In this document: in pieces, positions 9,215 to 64,000 of the stretch
Numbering within the stretch: the stretch's first letter is position 1
Layout: each line of letters starts with the position of its first letter
Assembly (NCBI GenBank): GCA_053919585.1
Contig: CM132816.1
DNA from: Euprymna scolopes
Taxonomy: Eukaryota
Reading direction: 5' to 3' (one strand)
DNA length: 64,000 nucleotides
The notes under the pieces: generated by a model
Told to the model about the DNA's origin: nothing
The model's database searches: none
What the model saw: the letters and a program-made list of their open reading frames with translations, nothing else
Made by a program: the position numbers and the translations under genes

Positions 9215-9557
9215 CATATATCTTTCATTCTGTTCTCTTGGTCTTATTGAATTCCAGTACAATAATCTATCTAGTCTGGTGTAGTATCCAGCTTCATGCA
9301 GTTACTTGAGGTAACATCACTTGGAGAAGGTGCACAATACCTTGTAAAAGTAATGTTGGTTAGCTATAGCGAGAGATCTTATTTGGGCAGCAAATACAAA
9401 ATGTGATTTTGAATATTTGGTCAAGATTTACTTCCAGAGAAAAGTATCCTCATGCCAGGTTGTTTTGACAAACCGCGTCCACGGAGAGACTTTAGAGACT
9501 CGAGGATAGTGTCTAGTAAGCATTTAAGTTCTCTCTGGCATTCAAGTTCTCTACCAA

Positions 9558-9976: not shown

Positions 9977-10011
9977 TAATATATAAACAAGAAATTGAAA
10001 TGTAGCATCTG

Positions 10012-10052
10012 AAGAACAGATATTACACTTTGATCTTGGCCAAAAGGCCAAG
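10012..10052 (-). pseudogene. U2 snRNA 5' fragment
   Basis: Minus strand cttggccttttggccaagatcaaagtgtaatatctgttctt vs invertebrate-type U2 ctcggccttttggctaagatcaaagtgtagtatctgttctt (38/41). Confidence 0.85.
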
Positions 10053-10491
10053 GAAAACAAATAATTTTTATTAGCTTTGCCTTAAAAGTGACACCGAATT
10101 TTTTGTTGTTTAATTGAGGAATTGGAAAATTCCACTTTCCTTTTTTAGGGGTGCACAGCATGATAACGGCCGAAGCAAATTACGATATTAATATAAAGAT
10201 AAGATATAAATATATAATAGAAAGTTGAAAGATGTGAAGAGGGAAATGTCAATGAACAGTTCTTTAAACAGGAGAGGAAATGCATTATTGGAAAGGAGGA
10301 TACAATCAACCTTTCGGAAAGGCTTTACATATAAATTTCATTATACAATACGATGGGACAACACGAAGATATATACTTAAAAGACAAAACGCATTTGGTT
10401 GAAATGACGAACGAACACAAAAGGCTTACATAACAAATAAAAGACATTTATTTTTCCAGCTGGTGATGAGAATTCGATGCCTGGCTAATTT

Positions 10492-10535
10492 GCTACAACG
10501 TTTCGTCTTTGTCTCCCCTTCACTTCGTAAGGAGT
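10492..10535 (-). ncRNA. Degenerate PLE-type hammerhead remnant at the satellite junction
   Basis: Minus strand c-CTTACGA-agtgaaggggagacaaagac-GAAACGTTG-tagc: one change from CTGACGA and an intact GAAACGTT, but poor stems I and II; AATAAA follows on the minus strand (plus 10447-10452). Confidence 0.4.
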
Positions 10536-10548
10536 TTCGGCTAACTCT

Positions 10549-13500
10549 CTGCTGAACTAATTTGGACTGTTCTCTGTGACTGCTTAAAACTATCTCCTTT
10601 ACTGAACTGAATTCAAGTGTATATATTAATTCTATGTGACGTCAACATGCGGCCCAAATAAGCGCGTCCTGCTGGACTAACTTGGACTGTTCTCTGTGAC
10701 TGCTTCAAACTATTTCCCTGACTGAACTGAATTCAAGTGTATATATTAATTCTATGTGACGTCAACATGCGGCCCAAATAAGCGCGTCCTGCTGGACTAA
10801 CTTGGGCTGTTCTCTGTGACTGCTTCAAACTATTTCCCTGACTGAACTGAATTCAAGTGTATATATTAATTCTATGTGACGTCAACATGCGGCCCAAATA
10901 AGTCTGTACTGCTGGACTAACGTGGACTGTTCTCTGTGACTGCTTAAAACTATTTCCCTGACTGAACTGAATTCAAGTGTATATATTAATTCTATGTGAC
11001 GTCAACATGCGGCCCAAATAAGCGCGTCCTGCTGGACTAACGTGGACTGTTCTCTGTGACTGCTTAAAACTATTTCCCTGACTGAACTGAATTCAAGTGT
11101 ATATATTAATTCTATGTGACGTCAACATGCGGCCCAAATAAGTCTGTACTGCTGGACTAACTTGGACTGTTCTCTGTGACTGCTTCAAACTATTTCCCTG
11201 ACTGAACTGAATTCAAGTGTATATATTAATTCTATGTGACGTCAACATGCGGCCCAAATATGCGCGTCCTGCTGGACTAACGTGGACTGTTCTCTGTGAC
11301 TGCTTAAAACTATTTCCCTGACTGAACTGAATTCAAGTGTATATATTAATTATATGTGACGTCAACATGCGGCCCAAATATGCGCGTCCTGCTGGACTAA
11401 CGTGGACTGTTCTCTGTGACTGCTTCAAACTATTTCCCTGACTGAACTGAATTCAAGTGTATATATTAATTCTATGTGACGTCAACATGCGGCCCAAATA
11501 TGCGCGTCCTGCTGGACTAACGTGGACTGTTCTCTGTGACTGCTTCAAACTATCTCCCTGACTGAACTGAATTCAAGTGTATATATTAATTATATGTGAC
11601 GTCAACATGCGGCCCAAATATGCGCGTCCTGCTGGACTGACGTGGACTGTTCTCTGTGACTGCTTAAAACTATTTCCCTGACTGAACTGAATTCAAGTGT
11701 ATATATTAATTCTATGTGACGTCAACATGCGGCCCAAATAAGTCTGTACTGCTGGACTAACTTGGACTGTTCTCTGTGACTGCTTCAAACTATTTCCCTG
11801 ACTGAACTGAATTCAAGTGTATATATTAATTATATGTGACGTCAACATGCGGCCCAAATATGCGCGTCCTGCTGGACTAACTTGGACTGTTCTCTGTGAC
11901 TGCTTAAAACTATTTCCCTGACTGAACTGAATTCAAGTGTATATATTAATTCTATGTGACGTCAACATGCGGCCCAAATATGCGCGTCCTGCTGGACTAA
12001 CTTGGACTGTTCTCTGTGACTGCTTAAAACTATTTCCCTGACTGAACTGAATTCAAGTGTATATATTAATTCTATGTGACGTCAACATGCGGCCCAAATA
12101 AGTCTGTACTGCTGGACTAACGTGGACTGTTCTCTGTGACTGCTTAAAACTATTTCCCTGACTGAACTGAATTCAAGTGTATATATTAATTCTATGTGAC
12201 GTCAACATGCGGCCCAAATAAGTCTGTACTGCTGGACTAACGTGGACTGTTCTCTGTGACTGCTTAAAACTATTTCCCTGACTGAACTGAATTCAAGTGT
12301 ATATATTAATTCTATGTGACGTCAACATGCGGCCAAAACAAGTCTGTACTGCTGGACTAACTTGGACTGTTCTCTGTGACTGCTTAAACTATTTCCCTGA
12401 CTGAACTGAATTCAAGTGTATATATTAATTATATGTGACGTCAACATGCGGCCCAAATATGCGCGTCCTGCTGGACTAACGTGGACTGTTCTCTGTGACT
12501 GCTTAAAACTATTTCCCTGACTGAACTGAATTCAAGTGTATATATTAATTCTATGTGACGTCAACATGCGGCCCAAATAAGTTTGTACTGCTGGACTAAC
12601 GTGGACTGTTCTCTGTGACTGCTTCAAACTATTTCCCTGACTGAACTGAATTCAAGTGTATATATTAATTCTATGTGACGTCAACATGCGGCCCAAATAA
12701 GTCTGTACTGCTGGACTAACTTGGACTGTTCTCTGTGACTGCTTAAAACTATTTCCCTGACTGAACTGAATTCAAGTGTATATATTAATTATATGTGACG
12801 TCAACATGCGGCCCAAATATGCGCGTCCTGCTGGACTAACGTGGACTGTTCTCTGTGACTGCTTAAAACTATTTCCCTGACTGAACTGAATTCAAGTGTA
12901 TATATTAATTCTATGTGACGTCAACATGCGGCCCAAATAAGTCTGTACTGCTGGACTAACTTGGACTGTTCTCTGTGACTGCTTAAAACTATTTCCCTGA
13001 CTGAACTGAATTCAAGTGTATATATTAATTATATGTGACGTCAACATGCGGCCCAAATATGCGCGTCCTACTGGACTAACGTGGACTGTTCTCTGTGACT
13101 GCTTAAAACTATTTCCCTGACTGAACTGAATTCAAGTGTATATATTAATTCTATGTGACGTCAACATGCGGCCCAAATATGCGCGTCCTGCTGGACTAAC
13201 GTGGACTGTTCTCTGTGACTGCTTCAAACTATTTCCCTGACTGAACTGAATTCAAGTGTATATATTAATTATATGTGACGTCAACATGCGGCCCAAATAT
13301 GCGCGTCCTGCTTGACTAACGTGGACTGTTCTCTGTGACTGCTTCAAACTATTTCCCTGACTGAACTGAATTCAAGTGTATATATTAATTCTATGTGACG
13401 TCAACATGCGGCCCAAATAAGTCTGTACTGCTGGACTAACGTGGACTGTTCTCTGTGACTGCTTAAAACTATTTCCCTGACTGAACTGAATTCAAGTGTA

Positions 13501-16500
13501 TATATTAATTCTATGTGACGTCAACATGCGGCCCAAATAAGTCTGTACTGCTGGACTAACTTGGACTGTTCTCTGTGACTGCTTCAAACTATTTCCCTGA
13601 CTGAACTGAATTCAAGTGTATATATTAATTCTATGTGACGTCAACATGCGGCCCAAATATGCGCGTCCTGCTGGACTAACTTGGACTGTTCTCTGTGACT
13701 GCTTAAAACTATTTCCCTGACTGAACTGAATTCAAGTGTATATATTAATTCTATGTGACGTCAACATGCGGCCCAAATATGCGCGTCCTGCTGGACTAAC
13801 GTGGACTGTTCTCTGTGACTGCTTCAAACTATCTCCCTGACTGAACTGAATTCAAGTGTATATATTAATTATATGTGACGTCAACATGCGGCCCAAATAT
13901 GCGCGTCCTGCTTGACTAACGTGGACTGTTCTCTGTGACTGCTTAAAACTATTTCCCTGACTGAACTGAATTCAAGTGTATATATTAATTCTATGTGACG
14001 TCAACATGCGGCCCAAATAAGTCTGTACTGCTGGACTAACGTGGACTGTTCTCTGTGACTGCTTAAAACTATTTCCCTGACTGAACTGAATTCAAGTGTA
14101 TATATTAATTCTATGTGACGTCAACATGCGGCCCAAATAAGTCTGTACTGCTGGACTAACTTGGACTGTTCTCTGTGACTGCTTCAAACTATTTCCCTGA
14201 CTGAACTGAATTCAAGTGTATATATTAATTCTATGTGACGTCAACATGCGGCCCAAATATGCGCGTCCTGCTGGACTAACGTGGACTGTTCTCTGTGACT
14301 GCTTAAAACTATTTCCCTGACTGAACTGAATTCAAGTGTATATATTAATTATATGTGACGTCAACATGCGGCCCAAATATGCGCGTCCTGCTTGACTAAC
14401 GTGGACTTTTCTCTGTGACTGCTTAAAACTATTTCCCTGACTGAACTGAATTCAAGTGTATATATTAATTCTATGTGACGTCAACATGCGGCCCAAATAA
14501 GTCTGTACTGCTGGACTAACTTGGACTGTTCTCTGTGACTGCTTCAAACTATTTCCCTGACTGAACTGAATTCAAGTGTATATATTAATTCTATGTGACG
14601 TCAACATGCGGCCCAAATAAGTCTGTACTGCTGGACTAACTTGGACTGTTCTCTGTGACTGCTTCAAACTATTTCCCTGACTGAACTGAATTCAAGTGTA
14701 TATATTAATTCTATTTGACGTCAACATGCGGCCCAAATATGCGCGTCCTGCTGGACTAACTTGGACTGTTCTCTGTGACTGCTTAAAACTATTTCCCTGA
14801 CTGAACTGAATTCAAGTGTATATATTAATTCTATGTGACGTCAACATGCGGCCCAAATATGCGCGTCCTGCTGGACTAACGTGGACTGTTCTCTGTGACT
14901 GCTTCAAACTATTTCCCTGACTGAACTGAATTCAAGTGTATATATTAATTATATGTGACGTCAACATGCGGCCCAAATATGCGCGTCCTGCTTGACTAAC
15001 GTGGACTGTTCTCTGTGACTGCTTAAAACTATTTCCCTGACTGAACTGAATTCAAGTGTATATATTAATTCTATGTGACGTCAACATGCGGCCCAAATAA
15101 GTCTGTACTGCTGGACTAACTTGGACTGTTCTCTGTGACTGCTTCAAACTATTTCCCTGACTGAACTGAATTCAAGTGTATATATTAATTCTATGTGACG
15201 TCAACATGCGGCCCAAATATGCGCGTCCTGCTGGACTAACTTGGACTGTTCTCTGTGACTGCTTCAAACTATTTCCCTGACTGAACTGAATTCAAGTGTA
15301 TATATTAATTCTATGTGACGTCAACATGCGGCCCAAATATGCGCGTCCTGCTGGACTAACGTGGACTGTTCTCTGTGAATGCTTAAAACTATTTCCCTGA
15401 CTGAACTGAATTCAAGTGTATATATTAATTCTATGTGACGTCAACATGCGGCCCAAATATGCGCGTCCTGCTGGACTAACTTGGACTGTTCTCTGTGACT
15501 GCTTAAAACTATTTCCCTGACTGAACTGAATTCAAGTGTATATATTAATTATATGTGACGTCAACATGCGGCCCAAATATGCGCGTCCTGCTGGACTAAC
15601 TTGGACTGTTCTCTGTGACTGCTTAAAACTATTTCCCTGACTGAACTGAATTCAAGTGTATATATTAATTCTATGTGACGTCAACATGCGGCCCAAATAT
15701 GCGCGTCCTGCTGGACTAACTTGGACTGTTCTCTGTGACTGCTTAAAACTATTTCCCTGACTGAACTGAATTCAAGTGTATATATTAATTCTATGTGACG
15801 TCAACATGCGGCCCAAATATGCGCGTCCTGCTGGACTAACTTGGACTGTTCTCTGTGACTGCTTAAAACTATTTCCCTGACTGAACTGAATTCAAGTGTA
15901 TATATTAATTATATGTGACGTCAACATGCGGCCCAAATAAGTCTGTACTGCTGGACTAACTTGGACTGTTCTCTGTGACTGCTTCAAACTATTTCCCTGA
16001 CTGAACTGAATTCAAGTGTATATATTAATTCTATGTGACGTCAACATGCGGCCCAAATATGCGCGTCCTGCTGGACTAACTTGGACTGTTCTCTGTGACT
16101 GCTTCAAACTATTTCCCTGACTGAACTGAATTCAAGTGTATATATTAATTATATGTGACGTCAACATGCGGCCCAAAAAAGTCTGTACTGCTGGACTAAC
16201 TTGAACTGTTCTCTGTGACTGCTTAAAACTATTTCCCTGACTGAACTGAATTCAAGTGTATATATTAATTATATGTGACGTCAACATGCGGCCCAAATAT
16301 GCGCGTCCTGCTTGACTAACGTGGACTTTTCTCTGTGACTGCTTAAAACTATTTCCCTGACTGAACTGAATTCAAGTGTATATATTAATTCTATGTGACG
16401 TCAACATGCGGCCCAAATAAGTCTGTACTGCTGGACTAACTTGGACTGTTCTCTGTGACTGCTTCAAACTATTTCCCTGACTGAACTGAATTCAAGTGTA

Positions 16501-19500
16501 TATATTAATTCTATGTGACGTCAACATGCGGCCCAAATAAGTCTGTACTGCTGGACTAACTTGGACTGTTCTCTGTGACTGCTTCAAACTATTTCCCTGA
16601 CTGAACTGAATTCAAGTGTATATATTAATTCTATGTGACGTCAACATGCGGCCCAAATATGCGCGTCCTGCTGGACTAACTTGGACTGTTCTCTGTGACT
16701 GCTTAAAACTATTTCCCTGACTGAACTGAATTCAAGTGTATATATTAATTCTATGTGACGTCAACATGCGGCCCAAATATGCGCGTCCTGCTGGACTAAC
16801 GTGGACTGTTCTCTGTGACTGCTTCAAACTATTTCCCTGACTGAACTGAATTCAAGTGTATATATTAATTATATGTGACGTCAACATGCGGCCCAAATAT
16901 GCGCGTCCTGCTTGACTAACGTGGACTGTTCTCTGTGACTGCTTAAAACTATTTCCCTGACTGAACTGAATTCAAGTGTATATATTAATTCTATGTGACG
17001 TCAACATGCGGCCCAAATAAGTCTGTACTGCTGGACTAACTTGGACTGTTCTCTGTGACTGCTTAAAACTATTTCCCTGACTGAACTGAATTCAAGTGTA
17101 TATATTAATTCTATGTGACGTCAACATGCGGCCCAAATAAGTCTGTACTGCTGGACTAACTTGGACTGTTCTCTGTGACTGCTTAAAACTATTTCCCTGA
17201 CTGAACTGAATTCAAGTGTATATATTAATTCTATGTGACGTCAACATGCGGCCCAAATATGCGCGTCCTGCTGGACTAACTTGGACTGTTCTCTGTGACT
17301 GCTTAAAACTATTTCCCTGACTGAACTGAATTCAAGTGTATATATTAATTCTATGTGACGTCAACATGCGGCCCAAATATGCGCGTCCTGCTGGACTAAC
17401 GTGGACTGTTCTCTGTGAATGCTTCAAACTATTTCCCTGACTGAACTGAATTCAAGTGTATATATTAATTCTATGTGACGTCAACATGCGGCCCAAATAT
17501 GCGCGTCCTGCTGGACTAACTTGGACTGTTCTCTGTGACTGCTTAAAACTATTTCCCTGACTGAACTGAATTCAAGTGTATATATTAATTATATGTGACG
17601 TCAACATGCGGCCCAAATATGCGCGTCCTGCTGGACTAACTTGGACTGTTCTCTGTGACTGCTTCAAACTATTTCCCTGACTGAACTGAATTCAAGTGTA
17701 TATATTAATTCTATGTGACGTCAACATGCGGCCCAAATATGCGCGTCCTGCTGGACTAACTTGGACTGTTCTCTGTGACTGCTTAAAACTATTTCCCTGA
17801 CTGAACTGAATTCAAGTGTATATATTAATTCTATGTGACGTCAACATGCGGCCCAAATATGCGCGTCCTGCTGGACTAACTTGGACTGTTCTCTGTGACT
17901 GCTTAAAACTATTTCCCTGACTGAACTGAATTCAAGTGTATATATTAATTATATGTGACGTCAACATGCGGCCCAAATAAGTCTGTACTGCTGGACTAAC
18001 TTGGACTGTTCTCTGTGACTGCTTCAAACTATTTCCCTGACTGAACTGAATTCAAGTGTATATATTAATTCTATGTGACGTCAACATGCGGCCCAAATAT
18101 GCGCGTCCTGCTGGACTAACTTGGACTGTTCTCTGTGACTGCTTCAAACTATTTCCCTGACTGAACTGAATTCAAGTGTATATATTAATTATATGTGACG
18201 TCAACATGCGGCCCAAAAAAGTCTGTACTGCTGGACTAACTTGAACTGTTCTCTGTGACTGCTTAAAACTATTTCCCTGACTGAACTGAATTCAAGTGTA
18301 TATATTAATTCTATGTGACGTCAACATGCGGCCCAAATATGCGCGTCCTGCTGGACTAACTTGGACTGTTCTCTGTGACTGCTTAAAACTATTTCCCTGA
18401 CTGAACTGAATTCAAGTGTATATATTAATTCTATGTGACGTCAACATGCGGCCCAAATATGCGCGTCCTGCTGGACTAACTTGGACTGTTCTCTGTGACT
18501 GCTTAAAACTATTTCCCTGACTGAACTGAATTCAAGTGTATATATTAATTCTATGTGACGTCAACATGCGGCCCAAATATGCGCGTCCTGCTGGACTAAC
18601 GTGGACTGTTCTCTGTGAATGCTTAAAACTATTTCCCTGACTGAACTGAATTCAAGTGTATATATTAATTCTATGTGACGTCAACATGCGGCCCAAATAT
18701 GCGCGTCCTGCTGGACTAACTTGGACTGTTCTCTGTGACTGCTTAAAACTATTTCCCTGACTGAACTGAATTCAAGTGTATATATTAATTATATGTGACG
18801 TCAACATGCGGCCCAAATATGCGCGTCCTGCTGGACTAACTTGGACTGTTCTCTGTGACTGCTTCAAACTATTTCCCTGACTGAACTGAATTCAAGTGTA
18901 TATATTAATTCTATGTGACGTCAACATGCGGCCCAAATATGCGCGTCCTGCTGGACTAACTTGGACTGTTCTCTGTGACTGCTTCAAACTATTTCCCTGA
19001 CTGAACTGAATTCAAGTGTATATATTAATTCTATGTGACGTCAACATGCGGCCCAAATATGCGCGTCCTGCTGGACTAACTTGGACTGTTCTCTGTGACT
19101 GCTTAAAACTATTTCCCTGACTGAACTGAATTCAAGTGTATATATTAATTATATGTGACGTCAACATGCGGCCCAAATAAGTCTGTACTGCTGGACTAAC
19201 TTGGACTGTTCTCTGTGACTGCTTCAAACTATTTCCCTGACTGAACTGAATTCAAGTGTATATATTAATTCTATGTGACGTCAACATGCGGCCCAAATAT
19301 GCGCGTCCTGCTGGACTAACTTGGACTGTTCTCTGTGACTGCTTCAAACTATTTCCCTGACTGAACTGAATTCAAGTGTATATATTAATTATATGTGACG
19401 TCAACATGCGGCCCAAAAAAGTCTGTACTGCTGGACTAACTTGAACTGTTCTCTGTGACTGCTTAAAACTATTTCCCTGACTGAACTGAATTCAAGTGTA

Positions 19501-22500
19501 TATATTAATTCTATGTGACGTCAACATGCGGCCCAAATATGCGCGTCCTGCTGGACTAACTTGGACTGTTCTCTGTGACTGCTTAAAACTATTTCCCTGA
19601 CTGAACTGAATTCAAGTGTATATATTAATTCTATGTGACGTCAACATGCGGCCCAAATAAGTCTGTACTGCTGGACTAACGTGGACTGTTCTCTGTGACT
19701 GCTTAAAACTATTTCCCTGACTGAACTGAATTCAAGTGTATATATTAATTCTATGTGACGTCAACATGCGGCCCAAATAAGTCTGTACTGCTGGACTAAC
19801 GTGGACTGTTCTCTGTGACTGCTTAAAACTATTTCCCTGACTGAACTGAATTCAAGTGTATATATTAATTCTATGTGACGTCAACATGCGGCCAAAACAA
19901 GTCTGTACTGCTGGACTAACTTGGACTGTTCTCTGTGACTGCTTAAACTATTTCCCTGACTGAACTGAATTCAAGTGTATATATTAATTATATGTGACGT
20001 CAACATGCGGCCCAAATATGCGCGTCCTGCTGGACTAACGTGGACTGTTCTCTGTGACTGCTTAAAACTATTTCCCTGACTGAACTGAATTCAAGTGTAT
20101 ATATTAATTCTATGTGACGTCAACATGCGGCCCAAATAAGTTTGTACTGCTGGACTAACTTGGACTGTTCTCTGTGACTGCTTCAAACTATTTCCCTGAC
20201 TGAACTGAATTCAAGTGTATATATTAATTCTATGTGACGTCAACATGCGGCCCAAATAAGTCTGTACTGCTGGACTAACTTGGACTGTTCTCTGTGACTG
20301 CTTAAAACTATTTCCCTGACTGAACTGAATTCAAGTGTATATATTAATTATATGTGACGTCAACATGCGGCCCAAATATGCGCGTCCTGCTGGACTAACG
20401 TGGACTGTTCTCTGTGACTGCTTAAAACTATTTCCCTGACTGAACTGAATTCAAGTGTATATATTAATTCTATGTGACGTCAACATGCGGCCCAAATAAG
20501 TCTGTACTGCTGGACTAACTTGGACTGTTCTCTGTGACTGCTTAAAACTATTTCCCTGACTGAACTGAATTCAAGTGTATATATTAATTATATGTGACGT
20601 CAACATGCGGCCCAAATATGCGCGTCCTACTGGACTAACGTGGACTGTTCTCTGTGACTGCTTAAAACTATTTCCCTGACTGAACTGAATTCAAGTGTAT
20701 ATATTAATTCTATGTGACGTCAACATGCGGCCCAAATATGCGCGTCCTGCTGGACTAACGTGGACTGTTCTCTGTGACTGCTTAAAACTATTTCCCTGAC
20801 TGAACTGAATTCAAGTGTATATATTAATTATATGTGACGTCAACATGCGGCCCAAATATGCGCGTCCTGCTTGACTAACGTGGACTGTTCTCTGTGACTG
20901 CTTCAAACTATTTCCCTGACTGAACTGAATTCAAGTGTATATATTAATTCTATGTGACGTCAACATGCGGCCCAAATAAGTCTGTACTGCTGGACTAACT
21001 TGGACTGTTCTCTGTGACTGCTTCAAACTATTTCCCTGACTGAACTGAATTCAAGTGTATATATTAATTCTATGTGACGTCAACATGCGGCCCAAATATG
21101 CGCGTCCTGCTGGACTAACTTGGACTGTTCTCTGTGACTGCTTCAAACTATTTCCCTGACTGAACTGAATTCAAGTGTATATATTAATTATATGTGACGT
21201 CAACATGCGGCCCAAATATGCGCGTCCTGCTGGACTAACGTGGACTGTTCTCTGTGACTGCTTCAAACTATTTCCCTGACTGAACTGAATTCAAGTGTAT
21301 ATATTAATTCTATGTGACGTCAACATGCGGCCCAAATAAGTCTGTACTGCTGGACTAACTTGGACTGTTCTCTGTGACTGCTTAAAACTATTTCCCTGAC
21401 TGAACTGAATTCAAGTGTATATATTAATTCTATGTGACGTCAACATGCGGCCCAAATAAGTCTGTACTGCTGGACTAACTTGGACTGTTCTCTGTGACTG
21501 CTTCAAACTATTTCCCTGACTGAACTGAATTCAAGTGTATATATTAATTCTATGTGACGTCAACATGCGGCCCAAATATGCGCGTCCTGCTGGACTAACT
21601 TGGACTGTTCTCTGTGACTGCTTAAAACTATTTCCCTGACTGAACTGAATGCAAGTGTATATATTAATTCTATGTGACGTCAACATGCGGCCCAAATATG
21701 CGCGTCCTGCTGGACTAACGTGGATTGTTCTCTGTGACTGCTTCAAACTATTTCCCTGACTGAACTGAATTCAAGTGTATATATTAATTCTATGTGACGT
21801 CAACATGCGGCCCAAATATGCGCGTCCTGCTGGACTAACGTGGACTGTTCTCTGTGACTGCTTCAAACTATTTCCCTGACTGAACTGAATTCAAGTGTAT
21901 ATATTAATTCTACGTGACGTCAACATGCGGCCCAAATATGCGCGTCCTGCTTGACTAACGTGGACTGTTCTCTGTGACTGCTTCAAACTATTTCCCTGAC
22001 TGAACTGAATTCAAGTGTATATATTAATTATATGTGACGTCAACATGCGGCCCAAAAAAGTCTGTACTGCTGGACTAACTTGAACTGTTCTCTGTGACTG
22101 CTTAAAACTATTTCCCTGACTGAACTGAATTCAAGTGTATATATTAATTCTATGTGACGTCAACATGCGGCCCAAATATGCGCGTCCTGCTGGACTAACT
22201 TGGACTGTTCTCTGTGACTGCTTAAAACTATTTCCCTGACTGAACTGAATTCAAGTGTATATATTAATTCTATGTGACGTCAACATGCGGCCCAAATAAG
22301 TCTGTACTGCTGGACTAACGTGGACTGTTCTCTGTGACTGCTTAAAACTATTTCCCTGACTGAACTGAATTCAAGTGTATATATTAATTCTATGTGACGT
22401 CAACATGCGGCCCAAATAAGTCTGTACTGCTGGACTAACGTGGACTGTTCTCTGTGACTGCTTAAAACTATTTCCCTGACTGAACTGAATTCAAGTGTAT

Positions 22501-25500
22501 ATATTAATTCTATGTGACGTCAACATGCGGCCAAAACAAGTCTGTACTGCTGGACTAACTTGGACTGTTCTCTGTGACTGCTTAAACTATTTCCCTGACT
22601 GAACTGAATTCAAGTGTATATATTAATTATATGTGACGTCAACATGCGGCCCAAATATGCGCGTCCTGCTGGACTAACGTGGACTGTTCTCTGTGACTGC
22701 TTAAAACTATTTCCCTGACTGAACTGAATTCAAGTGTATATATTAATTCTATGTGACGTCAACATGCGGCCCAAATAAGTTTGTACTGCTGGACTAACTT
22801 GGACTGTTCTCTGTGACTGCTTCAAACTATTTCCCTGACTGAACTGAATTCAAGTGTATATATTAATTCTATGTGACGTCAACATGCGGCCCAAATAAGT
22901 CTGTACTGCTGGACTAACTTGGACTGTTCTCTGTGACTGCTTAAAACTATTTCCCTGACTGAACTGAATTCAAGTGTATATATTAATTATATGTGACGTC
23001 AACATGCGGCCCAAATATGCGCGTCCTGCTGGACTAACGTGGACTGTTCTCTGTGACTGCTTAAAACTATTTCCCTGACTGAACTGAATTCAAGTGTATA
23101 TATTAATTCTATGTGACGTCAACATGCGGCCCAAATAAGTCTGTACTGCTGGACTAACTTGGACTGTTCTCTGTGACTGCTTAAAACTATTTCCCTGACT
23201 GAACTGAATTCAAGTGTATATATTAATTATATGTGACGTCAACATGCGGCCCAAATATGCGCGTCCTACTGGACTAACGTGGACTGTTCTCTGTGACTGC
23301 TTAAAACTATTTCCCTGACTGAACTGAATTCAAGTGTATATATTAATTCTATGTGACGTCAACATGCGGCCCAAATATGCGCGTCCTGCTGGACTAACGT
23401 GGACTGTTCTCTGTGACTGCTTAAAACTATTTCCCTGACTGAACTGAATTCAAGTGTATATATTAATTATATGTGACGTCAACATGCGGCCCAAATATGC
23501 GCGTCCTGCTTGACTAACGTGGACTGTTCTCTGTGACTGCTTCAAACTATTTCCCTGACTGAACTGAATTCAAGTGTATATATTAATTCTATGTGACGTC
23601 AACATGCGGCCCAAATAAGTCTGTACTGCTGGACTAACTTGGACTGTTCTCTGTGACTGCTTCAAACTATTTCCCTGACTGAACTGAATTCAAGTGTATA
23701 TATTAATTCTATGTGACGTCAACATGCGGCCCAAATATGCGCGTCCTGCTGGACTAACTTGGACTGTTCTCTGTGACTGCTTCAAACTATTTCCCTGACT
23801 GAACTGAATTCAAGTGTATATATTAATTATATGTGACGTCAACATGCGGCCCAAATATGCGCGTCCTGCTGGACTAACGTGGACTGTTCTCTGTGACTGC
23901 TTCAAACTATTTCCCTGACTGAACTGAATTCAAGTGTATATATTAATTCTATGTGACGTCAACATGCGGCCCAAATAAGTCTGTACTGCTGGACTAACTT
24001 GGACTGTTCTCTGTGACTGCTTAAAACTATTTCCCTGACTGAACTGAATTCAAGTGTATATATTAATTCTATGTGACGTCAACATGCGGCCCAAATAAGT
24101 CTGTACTGCTGGACTAACTTGGACTGTTCTCTGTGACTGCTTCAAACTATTTCCCTGACTGAACTGAATTCAAGTGTATATATTAATTCTATGTGACGTC
24201 AACATGCGGCCCAAATATGCGCGTCCTGCTGGACTAACTTGGACTGTTCTCTGTGACTGCTTAAAACTATTTCCCTGACTGAACTGAATGCAAGTGTATA
24301 TATTAATTCTATGTGACGTCAACATGCGGCCCAAATATGCGCGTCCTGCTGGACTAACGTGGATTGTTCTCTGTGACTGCTTCAAACTATTTCCCTGACT
24401 GAACTGAATTCAAGTGTATATATTAATTCTATGTGACGTCAACATGCGGCCCAAATATGCGCGTCCTGCTGGACTAACGTGGACTGTTCTCTGTGACTGC
24501 TTCAAACTATTTCCCTGACTGAACTGAATTCAAGTGTATATATTAATTCTACGTGACGTCAACATGCGGCCCAAATATGCGCGTCCTGCTTGACTAACGT
24601 GGACTGTTCTCTGTGACTGCTTAAAACTATTTCCCTGACTGAACTGAATTCAAGTGTATATATTAATTCTATGTGACGTCAACATGCGCCCCAAATATGC
24701 GCGTCCTGCTGGACTAACTTGGACTGTTCTCTGTGACTGCTTAAAACTATTTCCCTGACTGAACTGAATTCAAGTGTATATATTAATTCTATGTGACGTC
24801 AACATGCGGCCCAAATATGCGCGTCCTGCTGGACTAACGTGGACTGTTCTCTGTGACTGCTTAAAACTATTTCCCTGACTGAACTGAATTCAAGTGTATA
24901 TATTAATTATATGTGACGTCAACATGCGGCCCAAATATGCGCGTCCTGCTTGACTAACGTGGACTTTTCTCTGTGACTGCTTAAAACTATTTCCCTGACT
25001 GAACTGAATTCAAGTGTATATATTAATTCTATGTGACGTCAACATGCGGCCCAAATAAGTCTGTACTGCTGGACTAACTTGGACTGTTCTCTGTGACTGC
25101 TTCAAACTATTTCCCTGACTGAACTGAATTCAAGTGTATATATTAATTTTATGTGACGTCAACATGCGGCCCAAATAAGTCTGTACTGCTGGACTAACTT
25201 GGACTGTTCTCTGTGACTGCTTCAAACTATTTCCCTGACTGAACTGAATTCAAGTGTATATATTAATTCTATGTGACGTCAACATGCGGCCCAAATATGC
25301 GCGTCCTGCTGGACTAACTTGGACTGTTCTCTGTGACTGCTTAAAACTATTTCCCTGACTGAACTGAATTCAAGTGTATATATTAATTCTATGTGACGTC
25401 AACATGCGGCCCAAATATGCGCGTCCTGCTGGACTAACGTGGACTGTTCTCTGTGACTGCTTCAAACTATTTCCCTGACTGAACTGAATTCAAGTGTATA

Positions 25501-28500
25501 TATTAATTATATGTGACGTCAACATGCGGCCCAAATATGCGCGTCCTGCTTGACTAACGTGGACTGTTCTCTGTGACTGCTTAAAACTATTTCCCTGACT
25601 GAACTGAATTCAAGTGTATATATTAATTCTATGTGACGTCAACATGCGGCCCAAATAAGTCTGTACTGCTGGACTAACTTGGACTGTTCTCTGTGACTGC
25701 TTAAAACTATTTCCCTGACTGAACTGAATTCAAGTGTATATATTAATTCTATGTGACGTCAACATGCGGCCCAAATATGCGCGTCCTGCTGGACTAACTT
25801 GGACTGTTCTCTGTGACTGCTTCAAACTATTTCCCTGACTGAACTGAATTCAAGTGTATATATTAATTATATGTGACGTCAACATGCGGCCCAAATATGC
25901 GCGTCCTGCTGGACTAACGTGGACTGTTCTCTGTGAATGCTTCAAACTATTTCCCTGACTGAACTGAATTCAAGTGTATATATTAATTCTATGTGACGTC
26001 AACATGCGGCCCAAATATGCGCGTCCTGCTGGACTAACTTGGACTGTTCTCTGTGACTGCTTAAAACTATTTCCCTGACTGAACTGAATTCAAGTGTATA
26101 TATTAATTATATGTGACGTCAACATGCGGCCCAAATATGCGCGTCCTGCTAGACTAACTTGGACTGTTCTCTGTGACTGCTTCAAACTATTTCCCTGACT
26201 GAACTGAATTCAAGTGTATATATTAATTCTATGTGACGTCAACATGCGGCCCAAATATGCGCGTCCTGCTGGACTAACTTGGACTGTTCTCTGTGACTGC
26301 TTAAAACTATTTCCCTGACTGAACTGAATTCAAGTGTATATATTAATTCTATGTGACGTCAACATGCGGCCCAAATATGCGCGTCCTGCTGGACTAACTT
26401 GGACTGTTCTCTGTGACTGCTTAAAACTATTTCCCTGACTGAACTGAATTCAAGTGTATATATTAATTATATGTGACGTCAACATGCGGCCCAAATAAGT
26501 CTGTACTGCTGGACTAACTTGGACTGTTCTCTGTGACTGCTTCAAACTATTTCCCTGACTGAACTGAATTCAAGTGTATATATTAATTCTATGTGACGTC
26601 AACATGCGGCCCAAATATGCGCGTCCTGCTGGACTAACTTGGACTGTTCTCTGTGACTGCTTCAAACTATTTCCCTGACTGAACTGAATTCAAGTGTATA
26701 TATTAATTATATGTGACGTCAACATGCGGCCCAAAAAAGTCTGTACTGCTGGACTAACTTGAACTGTTCTCTGTGACTGCTTAAAACTATTTCCCTGACT
26801 GAACTGAATTCAAGTGTATATATTAATTCTATGTGACGTCAACATGCGGCCCAAATATGCGCGTCCTGCTGGACTAACTTGGTATGTTCTCTGTGACTGC
26901 TTAAAACTATTTCCCTGACTGAACTGAATTCAAGTGTATATATTAATTCTATGTGACGTCAACATGCGGCCCAAATATGCGCGTCCTGCTGGACTAACTT
27001 GGACTGTTCTCTGTGACTGCTTAAAACTATTTCCCTGACTGAACTGAATTCAAGTGTATATATTAATTATATGTGACGTCAACATGCGGCCCAAATATGC
27101 GCGTCCTGCTGGACTAACGTGGACTGTTCTCTGTGACTGCTTAAAACTATTTCCCTGACTGAACTGAATTCAAGTGTATATATTAATTCTATGTGACGTC
27201 AACATGCGGCCCAAATAAGTCTGTACTGCTGGACTAACTTGGACTGTTCTCTGTGACTGCTTAAAACTATTTCCCTGACTGAACTGAATTCAAGTGTATA
27301 TATTAATTCTATGTGACGTCAACATGCGGCCCAAATATGCGCGTCCTGCTGGACTAACGTGGACTGTTCTCTGTGACTGCTTAAAACTATTTCCCTGACT
27401 GAACTGAATTCAAGTGTATATATTAATTATATGTGACGTCAACATGCGGCCCAAATATGCGCGTCCTGCTTGACTAACGTGGACTTTTCTCTGTGACTGC
27501 TTAAAACTATTTCCCTGACTGAACTGAATTCAAGTGTATATATTAATTCTATGTGACGTCAACATGCGGCCCAAATAAGTCTGTACTGCTGGACTAACTT
27601 GGACTGTTCTCTGTGACTGCTTCAAACTATTTCCCTGACTGAACTGAATTCAAGTGTATATATTAATTCTATGTGACGTCAACATGCGGCCCAAATAAGT
27701 CTGTACTGCTGGACTAACTTGGACTGTTCTCTGTGACTGCTTCAAACTATTTCCCTGACTGAACTGAATTCAAGTGTATATATTAATTCTATGTGACGTC
27801 AACATGCGGCCCAAATATGCGCGTCCTGCTGGACTAACTTGGACTGTTCTCTGTGACTGCTTAAAACTATTTCCCTGACTGAACTGAATTCAAGTGTATA
27901 TATTAATTCTATGTGACGTCAACATGCGGCCCAAATATGCGCGTCCTGCTGGACTAACGTGGACTGTTCTCTGTGACTGCTTCAAACTATTTCCCTGACT
28001 GAACTGAATTCAAGTGTATATATTAATTATATGTGACGTCAACATGCGGCCCAAATATGCGCGTCCTGCTTGACTAACGTGGACTGTTCTCTGTGACTGC
28101 TTAAAACTATTTCCCTGACTGAACTGAATTCAAGTGTATATATTAATTCTATGTGACGTCAACATGCGGCCCAAATAAGTCTGTACTGCTGGACTAACTT
28201 GGACTGTTCTCTGTGACTGCTTAAAACTATTTCCCTGACTGAACTGAATTCAAGTGTATATATTAATTCTATGTGACGTCAACATGCGGCCCAAATAAGT
28301 CTGTACTGCTGGACTAACTTGGACTGTTCTCTGTGACTGCTTCAAACTATTTCCCTGACTGAACTGAATTCAAGTGTATATATTAATTCTATGTGACGTC
28401 AACATGCGGCCCAAATATGCGCGTCCTGCTGGACTAACTTGGACTGTTCTCTGTGACTGCTTAAAACTATTTCCCTGACTGAACTGAATTCAAGTGTATA

Positions 28501-30420
28501 TATTAATTCTATGTGACGTCAACATGCGGCCCAAATATGCGCGTCCTGCTAGACTAACGTGGACTGTTCTCTGTGAATGCTTAAAACTATTTCCCTGACT
28601 GAACTGAATTCAAGTGTATATATTAATTCTATGTGACGTCAACATGCGGCCCAAATATGCGCGTCCTGCTGGACTAACTTGGACTGTTCTCTGTGACTGC
28701 TTAAAACTATTTCCCTGACTGAACTGAATTCAAGTGTATATATTAATTATATGTGACGTCAACATGCGGCCCAAATATGCGCGTCCTGCTGGACTAACTT
28801 GGACTGTTCTCTGTGACTGCTTCAAACTATTTCCCTGACTGAACTGAATTCAAGTGTATATATTAATTCTATGTGACGTCAACATGCGGCCCAAATATGC
28901 GCGTCCTGCTGGACTAACTTGGACTGTTCTCTGTGACTGCTTAAAACTATTTCCCTGACTGAACTGAATTCAAGTGTATATATTAATTCTATGTGACGTC
29001 AACATGCGGCCCAAATATGCGCGTCCTGCTGGACTAACTTGGACTGTTCTCTGTGACTGCTTAAAACTATTTCCCTGACTGAACTGAATTCAAGTGTATA
29101 TATTAATTATATGTGACGTCAACATGCGGCCCAAATAAGTCTGTACTGCTGGACTAACTTGGACTGTTCTCTGTGACTGCTTCAAACTATTTCCCTGACT
29201 GAACTGAATTCAAGTGTATATATTAATTCTATGTGACGTCAACATGCGGCCCAAATATGCGCGTCCTGCTGGACTAACTTGGACTGTTCTCTGTGACTGC
29301 TTCAAACTATTTCCCTGACTGAACTGAATTCAAGTGTATATATTAATTATATGTGACGTCAACATGCGGCCCAAAAAAGTCTGTACTGCTGGACTAACTT
29401 GAACTGTTCTCTGTGACTGCTTAAAACTATTTCCCTGACTGAACTGAATTCAAGTGTATATATTAATTCTATGTGACGTCAACATGCGGCCCAAATATGC
29501 GCGTCCTGCTGGACTAACTTGGACTGTTCTCTGTGACTGCTTAAAACTATTTCCCTGACTGAACTGAATTCAAGTGTATATATTAATTCTATGTGACGTC
29601 AACATGCGGCCCAAATATGCGCGTCCTGCTGGACTAACTTGGACTGTTCTCTGTGACTGCTTAAAACTATTTCCCTGACTGAACTGAATTCAAGTGTATA
29701 TATTAATTATATGTGACGTCAACATGCGGCCCAAATATGCGCGTCCTGCTGGACTAACGTGGACTGTTCTCTGTGACTGCTTAAAACTATTTCCCTGACT
29801 GAACTGAATTCAAGTGTATATATTAATTCTATGTGACGTTAACATGCGGCCCAAATAAGTCTGTACTGCTGGACTAACTTGGACTGTTCTCTGTGACTGC
29901 TTAAAACTATTTCCCTGACTGAACTGAATTCAAGTGTATATATTAATTCTATGTGACGTCAACATGCGGCCCAAATATGCGCGTCCTGCTGGACTAACTT
30001 GGACTGTTCTCTGTGACTGCTTAAACTATTTCCCTGACTGAACTGAATTCAAGTGTATATATTAATTCTATGTGACGTAAACATGCGGCCCAAATAAGTC
30101 TGTACTGCTGGACTAACTTGGACTGTTCTCTGTGACTGCTTCAAACTATTTCCCTGACTGAACTGAATTCAAGTGTATATATTAATTCTATGTGACGTCA
30201 ACATGCGGCCAAAATATGCGCGTCCTGCTGGACTAACTTGGACTGTTCTCTGTGACTGCTTCAAACTATTTCCCTGACTGAACTGAATTCAAGTGTATAT
30301 ATTAATTCTATGTGACGTCAACATGCGGCCCAAATATGCGCGTCCTGCTGGACTAACGTGGACTGTTCTCTGTGACTGCTTAAAACTATTTCCCTGACTG
30401 AACTGAATTCAAGTGTATAT
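10549..30420. repeat. Satellite variant domain A
   Basis: ctGgact allele with alternating aaatatgcgcgtcc / aaataagtctgtac, cGtgg/cTtgg, ttAaaac/ttCaaac and attAta/attCta. Confidence 0.85.
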
Positions 30421-33400
30421 ATTAATTCTATGTGACGTCAACATGCGGCCCAAATAAGCGCGTCCTGCTAGACTAACTTGGACTGTTCTCTGTGACTGCT
30501 TCAAACTATTTCCTTGACTGAACTGAATTCAAGTGTATATATTAATTCTATGTGACGTCAACATGCGGCCCAAATAAGCGCGTCCTGCTAGACTAACTTG
30601 GACTGTTCTCTGTGACTGCTTCAAACTATTTCCCTGACTGAACTGAATTCAAGTGTATATATTAATTCTATGTGACGTCAACATGCGGCCCAAACAAGTC
30701 TGTACTGCTGGACTAACTTGGACTGTTCTCTGTGACTGCTTCAAACTATTTCCCTGACTGAACTGAATTCAAGTGTATATATTAATTCTATGTGACGTCA
30801 ACATGCGGCCCAAATAAGCGCGTCCTGCTGGACTAACTTGGACTGTTCTCTGTGACTGCTTAAAACTATTTCCCTGACTGAACTGAATTCAAGTCTATAT
30901 ATTAATTCTATGTGACGTCAACATGCGGCCCAAATAAGCGCGTCCTGCTAGACTAACTTGGACTGTTCTCTGTGACTGCTTCAAACTATTTCCCTGACTG
31001 AACTGAATTCAAGTGTATATATTAATTCTATGTGACGTCAACATGCGGCCCAAATATGCGCGTCCTGCTAGACTAACTTGGACTGTTCTCTGTGACTGCT
31101 TAAAACTATTTCCCTGACTGAACTGAATTCAAGTCTATATATTAATTCTATGTGACGTCAACATGCGGCCCAAATAAGCGCGTCCTGCTAGACTAACTTG
31201 GACTGTTCTCTGTGGGTGCTTCAAACTATTTCCTTGACTGAACTGAATTCAAGTCTATATATTAATTCTATGTGACGTCAACATGCGGCCCAAATAAGCG
31301 CGACCTGCTAGACTAACTTGGACTGTTCTCTGTGAGTGCTTCAAACTATTTCCTTGACTGAACTGAATTCAAGTGTATATATTAATTCTATGTGACGTCA
31401 ACATGCGGCCCAAATAAGCGCGTCCTGCTAGACTAACTTGGACTGTTCTCTGTGACTGCTTAAAACTATTTCCCTGACTGAACTGAATTCAAGTGTATAT
31501 ATTAATTCTATGTGACGTCAACATGCGGCCCAAATATGCGCGTCCTGCTAGACTAACTTGGACTGTTCTCTGTGACTGCTTAAAACTAGTTCCCTGACTG
31601 AACTGAATTCAAGTGTATATATTAATTCTATGTGACGTCAACATGCGGCCCAAATAAGCGCGTCCTGCTAGACTAACTTGGACTGTTCTCTGTGGGTGCT
31701 TCAAACTATTTCCTTGACTGAACTGAATTCAAGTCTATATATTAATTCTATGTGACGTCAACATGCGGCCCAAATAAGCGCGTCCTGCTAGACTAACTTG
31801 GACTGTTCTCTGTGAGTGCTTCAAACTATTTCCTTGACTGAACTGAATTCAAGTGTATATATTAATTCTATGTGACGTCAACATGCGGCCCAAATAAGCG
31901 CGTCCTGCTAGACTAACTTGGACTGTTCTCTGTGACTGCTTCAAACTATTTCCCTGACTGAACTGAATTCAAGTGTATATATTAATTCTATGTGACGTCA
32001 ACATGCGGCCCAAATAAGCGCGTCCTGCTAGACTAACTTGGACTGTTCTCTGTGACTGCTTCAAACTATTTCCCTGACTGAACTGAATTCAAGTGTATAT
32101 ATTAATTCTATGTGACGTCAACATGCGGCCCAAATAAGCGCGTCCTGCTAGACTAACTTGGACTGTTCTCTGTGACTGCTTCAAACTATTTCCTTGACTG
32201 AACTGAATGCAATGTATATATTAAATCTCTGTGACGTCAACATGCGGCCCAAATAAGCGCGTCCTGCTAGACTAACTTGGACTGTTCTCTGTGACTTCTT
32301 CAAACTATCTCCCAGACTTAACTGAATTCAAGTGTATATATTAATGCTATGTGACGTCAACATGCGGCCCAAATAAGCGCGTCCTGCTGGACTGACTTGG
32401 ACTGTTCTCTGTGACTGCTTCAAACTATTTCCCTGACTGAACTGAATTCAAGTGTATATATTAATTCTATGTGACGTCAGCATGCGGCCCAAATAAGCGC
32501 GTCCTGCTAGACTAACTTGGACTGTTCTCTGTGACTGCTTCAAACTATTTCCCTGACTGAACTGAATTCAAGTGTATATATTAATTCTATGTGACGTCAA
32601 CATGCGGCCCAAATAAGCGCGTCCTGCTAGACTAACTTGGACTGTTCTCTGTGAGTGCTTCAAACTATTTCCTTGACTGAACTGAATTCAAGTGTATATA
32701 TTAATTCTATGTGACGTCAACATGCGGCCCAAATAAGCGCGTCCTGCTAGACTAACTTGGACTGTTCTCTGTGACTGCTTCAAACTATTTCCTTGACTGA
32801 ACTGAATTCAAGTGTATATATTAATTCTATGTGACGTCAACATGCGGCCCAAATAAGCGCGTCCTGCTAGACTAACTTGGACTGTTCTCTGTGAGTGCTT
32901 CAAACTATTTCCTTGACTGAACTGAATTCAAGTGTATATATTAATTCTATGTGACGTCAGCATGCGGCCCAAATAAGCGCGTCCTGCTAGACTAACTTGG
33001 ACTGTTCTCTGTGACTGCTTCAAACTATTTCCCTGACTGAACTGAATTCAAGTGTATATATTAATTCTATGTGACGTCAGCATGCGGCCCAAATAAGCGC
33101 GTCCTGCTAGACTAACTTGGACTGTTCTCTGTGACTGCTTCAAACTATTTCCCTGACTGAACTGAATTCAAGTGTATATATTAATTCTATGTGACGTCAG
33201 CATGCGGCCCAAATAAGCGCGTCCTGCTAGACTAACTTTGACTGTTCTCTTTGGGTGCTTCAAACTATTTCCTTGACTGAACTGAATTCAAGTGTATATA
33301 TTAATTCTATGTGACGTCAACATGCGGCCCAAATAAGTCCGTCCTGCTAGACTAACTTGGACTGTTCTCTGTGACTGCTTCAAACTATTTCCCTGACTGA

Positions 33401-39200: not shown

Positions 39201-39780
39201 CATGCGGCCCAAATAAGTCTGTACTGCTGGACTAACTTGGACTGTTCTCTGTGACTGCTTAAAACTATTTCCCTGACTGAACTGAATTCAAGTGTATATA
39301 TTAATTCTATGTGACGTCAACATGCGGCCCAAATATGCGCGTCCTGCTGGACTAACTTGGACTGTTCTCTGTGACTGCTTCAAACTATTTCCCTGACTGA
39401 ACTGAATTCAAGTGTATATATTAATTCTATGTGACGTCAACATGCGGCCCAAATAAGTCTGTACTGCTGGACTAACTTGGACTGTTCTCTGTGACTGCTT
39501 CAAACTATTTCCCTGACTGAACTGAATTCAAGTGTATATATTAATTCTATGTGACGTCAACATGCGGCCAAAATATGCGCGTCCTGCTGGACTAACTTGG
39601 ACTGTTCTCTGTGACTGCTTCAAACTATTTCCCTGACTGAACTGAATTCAAGTGTATATATTAATTCTATGTGACGTCAACATGCGGCCCAAATATGCGC
39701 GTCCTGCTGGACTAACGTGGACTGTTCTCTGTGACTGCTTAAAACTATTTCCCTGACTGAACTGAATTCAAGTGTATATA
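36236..39780. repeat. Satellite domain A block recurring inside domain B
   Basis: Abrupt return of A alleles including the rare markers acttttct (36721) and gtgaatgc (37691). Confidence 0.85.
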
Positions 39781-63700: not shown

Positions 63701-64000
63701 GTCCTGCTAGACTAACTTGGACTGTTCTCTGTGACTGCTTCAAACTATTTCCCTGACTGAATTGCATTCAAGTGTATATATTAATTCTATGTGACGTCAA
63801 CATGCGGCCCAAATAAGCGCGTCCTGCTAGACTAACTTGGACTGTTCTCTGTGACTGCTTCAAACTATTTCCCTGACTGAATTGCATTCAAGTGTATATA
63901 TTAATTCTATGTGACGTCAACATGCGGCCCAAATAAGCGCGTCCTGCTAGACTAACTTGGACTGTTCTCTGTGACTGCTTCAAACTATTTCCCTGACTGA
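39781..64000. repeat. Satellite domain B and derived sub-domains
   Basis: B alleles throughout; ggTcc enriched ~53200-59500; aTtgCattca rises from ~60500 and is present in every monomer from ~62080. Confidence 0.85.

What the first reader, a model, noticed from the sequence alone, without database searches (positions are those of the whole stretch)
10440..10700. Satellite may be a tandemly amplified promoter of a Penelope-like retroelement
Seen: read on the minus strand, the array runs straight out of its last monomer into a hammerhead-like remnant (CTTACGA...GAAACGTTG) and then AATAAA, with only ~15 bp between array and remnant. On that strand each monomer has TGACGTCA, then TAATATATA ~10 bp later, then TCAGTT/TCAGTC ~20-30 bp downstream. 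Known: PLE pLTRs carry a promoter followed by a minimal hammerhead; TGACGTCA is the CREB/ATF site; TCAGT is an Inr-type motif; satellites can arise from TE segments. The same TATA-then-hammerhead order appears at 8798-8844. Inference: the monomer is the promoter part of a pLTR expanded in place, giving ~445 tandem promoter modules facing the flank. The hammerhead is degenerate, so this is a hypothesis.
Basis: partly seen in the sequence, partly recalled or inferred. Interest (0 to 1): 0.75.

Follow-up and report, generated by a model that had tools for sequence, protein, structure and literature searches.

The report
Satellite grown from retrotransposon LTR promoter
A 57.6-kb block of 480 copies of a 120-base unit, found at only one place in this 5.9-Gb mollusc genome, grew out of the promoter-bearing middle of one old retrotransposon end-repeat (LTR); it is not a Penelope element and has no hammerhead ribozyme, so it is a clean example of a known way that satellites arise.

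Summary
A 120-bp tandem array starts at window 10549/10550. On the minus strand every unit carries TGACGTCA, then a TATA-like box, and AATAAA lies in the flank. The array has 480 units (57,596 bp), ends 4,144 bp past the window, and is the only such array in the assembly.

The unit is a promoter-like piece of a mobile element, amplified in place. Both halves of one parent copy still flank the array in register.

The parent is not a Penelope pseudo-LTR. It belongs to an ~850-bp dispersed family (at least 1,733 candidates) with these features:
- TGTTG...CAACA ends and exact 4-bp target duplications in 5 of 8 full copies.
- A polypurine tract and a shared non-coding internal region on one side.
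- One LTR-internal-LTR copy.

This fits a long terminal repeat of an old LTR retrotransposon. No coding region was found in the internal DNA read, so it may be non-autonomous.

No hammerhead exists here. Rfam finds none in the window or in 13 family loci, although the genome has at least 73 true ones. The "remnant" comes from substitutions private to this copy.

Whether the 480 modules are transcribed could not be tested. This scan earlier found a similar single-locus satellite born inside a dead retroelement elsewhere in this genome.

The parts
10210..10548 (-). Left flank of the array: the downstream half of the parent LTR copy (rest of R plus part of U5, read on the minus strand). It is truncated at about 10210.
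   Evidence: Dispersed repeat, 893 first-look candidates at 75-83% identity. Left flank + one unit + right flank aligns as one colinear match to full family copies, reference positions 88-760 of 854.
10447..10452 (-). AATAAA, the likely poly(A) signal of the LTR.
   Evidence: Column conservation 0.957 against an LTR mean of 0.746 in 39 copies. The surrounding 20-nt window is the most conserved of the whole LTR.
10497..10531 (-). GAAACGTTG). It is not a ribozyme.
   Evidence: No Rfam hammerhead at E<=10. The family majority here is CTTAGGA and GACGACAAAATG. No CTGANGA..GAAA. Fold z=+1.05.
10549..64000 (-). 120-bp tandem array, 445.5 units in the window. The whole array has 480 units (57,596 bp) and ends at L021:4144 (C34:1432144). 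Each unit is the parent LTR's U3/R border segment.
   Evidence: Whole-genome count of the unit-to-unit junction is 408 forward, 0 reverse, the same 408 counted inside this array.
10740..10749 (-). TATA-like box (TTAATATATA on the minus strand) in unit 2, as an example. It recurs every 120 bp.
   Evidence: Present in 477/480 units. Family column conservation 0.931.
10757..10764 (.). TGACGTCA palindrome (CRE/ATF-type site) in unit 2, as an example. It recurs every 120 bp.
   Evidence: Present in 476/480 units. Family column conservation 0.885, and the losses in dispersed copies look like CpG decay.

Best explanation
One old, end-truncated copy of an ~850-bp long terminal repeat (LTR) suffered a tandem duplication of a 120-bp internal segment. 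The array then grew to 480 units (57.6 kb), probably by repeated unequal exchange.

Shown:
- The array sits inside a single LTR copy, in register, with the two halves of that copy on either side.
- It is the only such array in the assembly.
- The parent family behaves like an LTR: TGTTG..CAACA ends, 4-bp target duplications, a polypurine tract, a shared internal region of at least ~1.3 kb read without coding potential, and one copy with LTR-internal-LTR in direct order.
- The array evolved by block duplications. Blocks of about 20 units recur, one region is a 3-unit higher-order repeat, and the right end is a very homogeneous run.

Inferred:
- The LTR's sense strand is the window's minus strand.
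- On that reading the amplified segment is the U3/R border. It holds about 25 nt upstream sequence, a CRE-type palindrome, a TATA box, the likely start site and roughly the first 45 nt of R. The array is then about 480 copies of an LTR core promoter, the last of which reads into the remaining R-U5 and its AATAAA.
- The array is most likely a neutral by-product, with no demonstrated function.
For: Array anatomy:
- Array ends and size.
- Far-end flank (L021:4145-4335) continues the family sequence exactly where the unit stops.
- Collapsed parent (left flank + one unit + right flank) aligns colinearly with 7 full copies.
- Single locus: 408 junction matches genome-wide, all forward, equal to the 408 in this array.
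- Block structure of the array.

LTR nature of the parent:
- Defined ends, and TSDs TAAA, AAAG, ATTT, ATAT, CATA in 5 of 8 full copies.
- 11-13 of 100 listed right ends are followed by the same pyrimidine tract, a polypurine tract on the minus strand.
- That tract leads into an internal region shared by L060-L072.
- L070 has two LTR pieces in direct order around this internal region.

Orientation and promoter reading:
- The TATA block (0.93), CRE (0.885) and AATAAA (0.957) are among the best conserved parts of the LTR, whose mean is 0.746. Only 9.5% of 20-nt windows are as conserved as the TATA-to-CRE block.
- The polypurine tract lies on the side predicted by that orientation.
Against: - No coding region (gag/pol) was found. 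At least ~1.3 kb of shared internal region, and up to ~2 kb read in single copies, is non-coding. The autonomous partner and superfamily are unknown.
- No tRNA-type primer-binding site is visible next to the LTR in L070.
- The two LTR pieces of L070 are only 79% alike, no closer than unrelated copies.
- The parent copy lacks both termini, so it has no target duplication of its own.
- The spacing from the TATA box to the TCAGT motifs (17-26 nt) is on the short side for a TATA-Inr pair.
Confidence: 0.8

Rival explanations
1. One reading: the unit is the promoter part of a Penelope-like element's pseudo-LTR, followed by a decayed minimal hammerhead.
For: The order CRE, TATA, short gap, CTTACGA...GAAACG, AATAAA exists on the minus strand. 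The genome does hold many real hammerheads and Penelope elements (notes).
Against: - No hammerhead by Rfam in the window or in 13 loci holding family copies and their flanks, while the same models find at least 73 hits above cut-off elsewhere in this genome.
- The family majority at those positions is CTTAGGA and GACGACAAAATG.
- TG..CA ends, 4-bp TSDs, a polypurine tract and an internal region point to an integrase-type LTR element.
- Neighbouring ORFs are LINE-type RT/APE, with no GIY-YIG.
Confidence: 0.03
2. The ~850-bp parent is a non-autonomous cut-and-paste DNA transposon with short inverted ends and 4-bp target duplications (for example Ginger-like, TGTNR...YNACA), not an LTR.
For: - The two ends are imperfect inverted repeats over about 16-18 nt.
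- Most copies seen are stand-alone units.
- No gag/pol or primer-binding site was found.
Against: - A recurrent polypurine tract and a shared internal region occur on one side only.
- There is a direct, not inverted, LTR pair in L070.
- A conserved TATA/CRE and AATAAA lie in one orientation. A passive DNA transposon does not need these.
Confidence: 0.07
3. The array is functional: about 480 tandem CRE+TATA modules are transcribed on the minus strand (satellite or small-RNA precursor), or act as a binding sink or enhancer block. Motif retention would then reflect selection.
For: Both motifs are kept in 99% of units, and none of the 17 polymorphic positions falls in them. The same motifs are among the most conserved in the parent family.
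Against: - Units are 97.4% identical overall, so retention is expected from recent amplification (chance probability about 0.06).
- The array is at a single locus.
- No expression data could be obtained.
Confidence: 0.12
4. The array, or its length, is an assembly artefact.
Against: There are 151 distinct unit variants arranged in ordered domains and recurring multi-unit blocks. Both junctions to unique flanks are in register.
Confidence: 0.04

Closest known systems
Satellites born from tandem sub-repeats inside LTR retrotransposons (Vondrak et al. 2020, PMC7004042; Macas et al. 2009 and Sharma et al. 2013, as cited in PMC10048060)
   Same: A short segment of an LTR retrotransposon is duplicated in tandem and occasionally expands into a long array, while the parent element is dispersed genome-wide.
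   Different: - The plant cases mostly start from pre-existing short tandem arrays in the 3' untranslated internal region and occur at many loci. Here dispersed copies carry exactly one unit, the source is the U3/R border of the LTR itself, and there is one locus only.
- The host is a mollusc.
Penelope-like element pseudo-LTRs with minimal hammerheads (Cervera and De la Pena 2014, PMC4209133)
   Same: A terminal repeat of a retroelement that would carry a promoter. Tandem arrangements are common.
   Different: No hammerhead, no RT/GIY-YIG partner, fixed 4-bp target duplications and TG..CA ends. Membership fails.
Animal non-LTR retrozymes / hammerhead tandem repeats (bioRxiv 10.64898/2026.07.22.740005; examples in this genome at C8:10432194 onward, period about 410 bp)
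   Same: Non-coding tandem units of a few hundred bases, derived from a retroelement.
   Different: Those units each hold a hammerhead and are dispersed by retrotransposition. This unit has none and exists at one locus.
Single-locus satellite born inside a dead retroelement's RNase H region, same genome (scan note s1-247308)
   Same: Same genome and same process: one short piece of a dead retroelement amplified hundreds of times at one place, with the parent readable on both sides.
   Different: That case has a 38-bp unit from coding sequence. This one has a 120-bp unit from the LTR's promoter region.

Membership tests
Penelope-like element pseudo-LTR | Hammerhead ribozyme motif in the terminal repeat (PMC4209133) | tested here: not met
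   Rfam at E<=10 finds none in window 1-12000 or in 13 family loci. Positive control: at least 73 hits above cut-off elsewhere in the genome. No CTGANGA..GAAA. The family majority lacks the core.
Penelope-like element pseudo-LTR | Repeats flank an ORF with a telomerase-like RT and a GIY-YIG endonuclease | tested here: not met
   No such ORF lies next to about 70 fetched copies. The adjoining internal region is non-coding. The nearby ORFs are RVT_1 plus an APE-type endonuclease, i.e. LINEs.
LTR of an LTR retrotransposon | TG...CA termini with short inverted repeat | tested here: met
   TGTTG(C/T)AT... and ...ATACAACA at the ends of full copies.
LTR of an LTR retrotransposon | Target-site duplication of fixed short length (4-6 bp) | tested here: met
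   Exact 4-bp duplications in 5 of 8 full copies: TAAA, AAAG, ATTT, ATAT, CATA. Chance is 1/256 each.
LTR of an LTR retrotransposon | Polypurine tract next to the 3' LTR, and direct LTRs around an internal region | tested here: met
   Recurrent GAGAAGGGAAGGGA-type tract abutting the LTR in 11-13 of 100 listed ends. Internal region shared by L060-L072. Two LTR pieces in direct order in L070.
LTR of an LTR retrotransposon | tRNA-complementary primer-binding site next to the 5' LTR | tested here: inconclusive
   The one junction read (L070) shows no TGG-type site. The copy is old and decayed.
LTR of an LTR retrotransposon | gag/pol coding region (autonomous element) | tested here: not met
   No ORF or Pfam domain in the internal DNA read: shared among copies for ~1.3-1.5 kb, up to ~2.2 kb in single loci. 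This fits a non-autonomous (LARD-like) element, or the coding part was not reached.
Hammerhead ribozyme, type I | Conserved core CUGANGA / GAAA / cleavage-site triplet around three helices | tested here: not met
   The core G is replaced (CUUACGA), there is no helix II, the fold is no better than shuffles, and there is no covariance-model hit.
Satellite DNA (classical sense) | Long head-to-tail arrays of a unit, usually at many loci or chromosomes | tested here: inconclusive
   The long array is met: 480 units, 57.6 kb, block-wise homogenisation. Multi-locus abundance is not met: one locus only.

The most novel reading that the evidence does not exclude
The block is a working battery of about 480 LTR core promoters (CRE + TATA). 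It fires on the minus strand to give repeat RNA or small-RNA precursors, or it soaks up CREB/ATF-type factors. Its motifs would then be kept by selection rather than by recent amplification alone.
Probability: 0.1. Interest if true: 0.6.

Novelty: new member of a known kind. Interest (0 to 1): 0.3.

Why it matters
The origin of a satellite can rarely be read directly. Here both halves of the parent LTR copy still flank the array in register, dispersed relatives carry exactly one unit, and the array exists at one locus. Source, breakpoints and growth pattern are therefore all visible.

It also shows that the amplified piece is the likely core promoter of the LTR. That gives a simple test case for whether tandem promoter arrays are transcribed or silenced in a cephalopod-type genome.

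It corrects a tempting misreading. In a genome full of real Penelope hammerheads, this flank only mimics one by chance substitutions.

Tried and rejected
- Hammerhead: Rfam permissive scans of the window and 13 family loci, a core-motif scan and a fold all came back negative.
- PLE partner: ORF scans of about 70 loci and Pfam on the 8 longest ORFs gave only LINE-type RT/APE.
I did not try to read them another way.
- Shared flanks directly next to the first 48 copies: none found, so those are solo units.
- Primer-binding site: a pattern search on the other LTR end gave no recurrent tRNA-type flank. It turned up an unrelated young repeat that shares 16 nt.
- Walking into the internal region reached about 2 kb without coding sequence, and I stopped there.
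- Selection on motifs within the array: not demonstrable.
- I printed a majority line for 240 nt of the LTR, only to check the motifs. No full-length consensus of the element was built.

Full report
**Observation**

TRF reports a 120-bp array from 10549 to the window end, with 445.5 copies at 96% matches. On the minus strand each unit reads TGACGTCA, 8 nt, TAATATATAC, then TCAGTT/TCAGTC. The flank holds CTTACGA (10531-10525), GAAACGTTG (10505-10497) and AATAAA (10452-10447).

**Extent and uniqueness**

The window is C34:1364001-1428000 of a 5.9-Gb assembly. The next 10 kb (L021) shows the array ending at L021:4144.
- In total there are 480 units, 57,596 bp: 475 units of 120 bp and 5 of 119 bp. 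Mean identity to the array consensus is 97.4%.
- A 29-nt pattern across the unit-to-unit junction, with up to 3 mismatches, occurs 408 times forward and 0 times reverse in the whole genome. Exactly 408 of those lie in this array. The satellite therefore exists at one locus only.
- A search with two units returned only single-unit matches (72-86%, locally up to 95%) scattered over many contigs.

**The unit is an internal piece of a dispersed element**

- The flank 10250-10560 is a dispersed repeat with 893 first-look candidates at 75-83% identity.
- In alignments of 19 and then 11 copies, each dispersed copy carries exactly one unit-like stretch and then continues with non-satellite sequence.
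- That same continuation follows the last unit of the array at L021:4145-4335.
- Left flank + one unit + right flank aligns as a single colinear match to seven full copies, at reference positions 88-760 of 854.
- The array is therefore an in-place expansion inside one copy. That copy has lost about 90 bp at each end.
- The breakpoints share at most 1-2 nt of microhomology (read).

**What the parent element is**

- Full copies are 810-855 bp. A full-copy query gives at least 1,733 candidates at 73-81% identity, so the family is old.
- The ends are TGTTG(C/T)AT... and ...ATACAACA. Five of eight full copies have exact 4-bp target duplications: TAAA, AAAG, ATTT, ATAT, CATA.
- The first 48 copies had no shared adjoining sequence, so they are solo units.
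- A whole-genome pattern search that printed 16-17 nt beyond the right end showed the same pyrimidine-rich flank in 11-13 of 100 listed ends. On the minus strand this is a polypurine tract abutting the LTR start.
- Fetched examples (L060-L062, then L063-L072) share an internal region from that tract for about 1.3-1.5 kb. The internal region itself has at least 1,669 candidates.
- L070 has two LTR pieces in direct order around this internal region. They are only 79% alike, no closer than unrelated copies, which fits an old burst.
- No ORF or domain was found in the internal DNA read, and no tRNA-type primer site is visible.
- I therefore file the parent as the LTR of an old LTR retrotransposon that looks non-autonomous. 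The superfamily is unknown.
- A DNA transposon with short inverted ends remains a minor rival.

**Orientation and the promoter reading**

Across 39 copies the mean column conservation is 0.746. The best conserved features are:

| Feature | Column conservation |
|---|---|
| AATAAA | 0.957 |
| 20-nt window around AATAAA (most conserved of the LTR) | 0.94 |
| TATA block | 0.931 |
| CRE palindrome | 0.885 |

Only 9.5% of 20-nt windows are as conserved as the TATA-to-CRE block. The stretch just downstream of the TATA box is the least conserved and is rich in indels.

All three signals read on the window's minus strand, and the polypurine tract lies on the side this orientation predicts. The amplified 120 bp is therefore most likely the U3/R border: about 25 nt upstream sequence, CRE, TATA, the start site and roughly the first 45 nt of R. 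This is inference from sequence. No expression data could be obtained.

**No hammerhead and no Penelope element**

- Rfam at E<=10 finds no hammerhead in window 1-12000 or in 13 family loci.
- The Hammerhead_1 model finds at least 73 hits above cut-off elsewhere in this genome, including arrays of about 410-bp period. The negative result is therefore meaningful.
- No CTGANGA...GAAA lies on either strand of 10100-10800 or at 8798-8844.
- The 91-nt stretch folds no better than shuffles, z=+1.05.
- In 34 family copies the majority at the 'remnant' is CTTAGGA and GACGACAAAATG. CTTACGA and GAAACG in the window are thus substitutions private to this copy.
- Penelope repeats are defined by hammerheads and an RT/GIY-YIG ORF (PMC4209133), and neither is present. 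The ORFs to the right of the array are LINE-type RT/APE.

**How the array grew**

Coding each unit by ten variable positions shows two domains:
- The left part is heterogeneous and is built from recurring multi-unit blocks. One block of about 20 units occurs twice in a row, and shorter strings recur many times.
- The right part is homogeneous. It includes a 3-unit higher-order stretch and a run of about 30 identical units.
- Mean identity to the consensus rises from 0.96 on the left to 0.986 on the right.

This is the usual picture of unequal exchange and block duplication.

The motifs are kept in 476-477 of 480 units. At 97.4% overall identity this does not show selection. None of the 17 polymorphic sites falls in the 18 motif positions, which has a chance probability of about 0.06.

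**Comparison and novelty**

Satellites that start from tandem sub-repeats inside LTR retrotransposons are known, mainly in plants (PMC7004042; further cases cited in PMC10048060). This scan already noted a single-locus satellite born in a dead retroelement's RNase H region in this same genome (note s1-247308).

The present case is a new member of that kind. What is distinctive is that the source is the LTR's own promoter region, dispersed copies hold a single unit, and both parent halves are preserved in register.

**Verdict**

- Observation: confirmed.
- Interpretation: partly supported. The TE-derived, promoter-bearing, in-place expansion holds. The Penelope and hammerhead readings are rejected.
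- Function: none shown.
- Interest: modest (0.3).

Noticed in passing
window 9881-10060 (-): A U2 snRNA-like sequence scores 44.8 bits, just under Rfam's 46-bit cut-off. Its 5' half is good and its 3' half is replaced by A/T runs. It is part of a dispersed repeat: window 9562-9985 matches L003:3226-2805 at 86%, with weaker pieces in L004, L012 and L015. It looks like a U2-headed SINE-type family.
   Followed up: partly
L020:2173-2549 and L065:2333-2490: Other copies of the same LTR family carry independent small tandem expansions of different segments: a 142-bp unit x about 3.5 (reference positions 158-300) and a 31-bp unit x 6 (positions 776-809). The family repeatedly seeds internal tandem repeats.
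   Followed up: partly
many contigs, e.g. C3:137619199(+)/137622302(-), C5:154296256(+)/154300651(-), C6:36086411(+)/36090214(-): A young, high-copy repeat has an invariant 35-nt string: GTGATGTCTCAGGTAGTTG followed by the 16-nt LTR end TGTTGCATTGTGGGGG. It made up about 40 of the first 100 pattern hits. It often occurs as inverted pairs 3.1-4.4 kb apart. It did not appear among the best matches to the LTR itself, so it shares only the terminal motif. Its nature is unknown.
   Followed up: no
G000 C8:10432194-10435515 and C3:89840417-89842627: Arrays of true type I hammerheads (53 and 48.6 bits) spaced about 410 bp apart, i.e. retrozyme-like tandem units. In C3 the array changes strand in the middle.
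   Followed up: no
L021:5082-6109 (-) and L021:6697-9087 (+), i.e. 1-5 kb right of the array: Two LINE-type fragments with RVT_1 domains (E 1e-22 and 7e-34), one with a 596-aa open frame. A second, truncated copy of the LTR family starts at L021:4462 with TGTTGCAT.
   Followed up: partly
L002:2088-2205 (+): A 5S rRNA match at 39.6 bits, above the 38-bit cut-off, beside an LTR copy on C26. It may be a 5S pseudogene or a 5S-derived SINE head.
   Followed up: no
L011/L017/L020 left flanks (C24:97.6-97.8 Mb): LTR copies are inserted into a repeat that ends in ...TTAGGTTGGTGCAAAA, a mariner-type terminal motif (recognised from memory). The region is duplicated within C24.
   Followed up: no
window 8148-8213, 8912-8988, 9144-9221: Three long (TA)n tracts of 33-40 repeats lie within 1.1 kb. 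They give spurious miRNA-family hits in Rfam.
   Followed up: no
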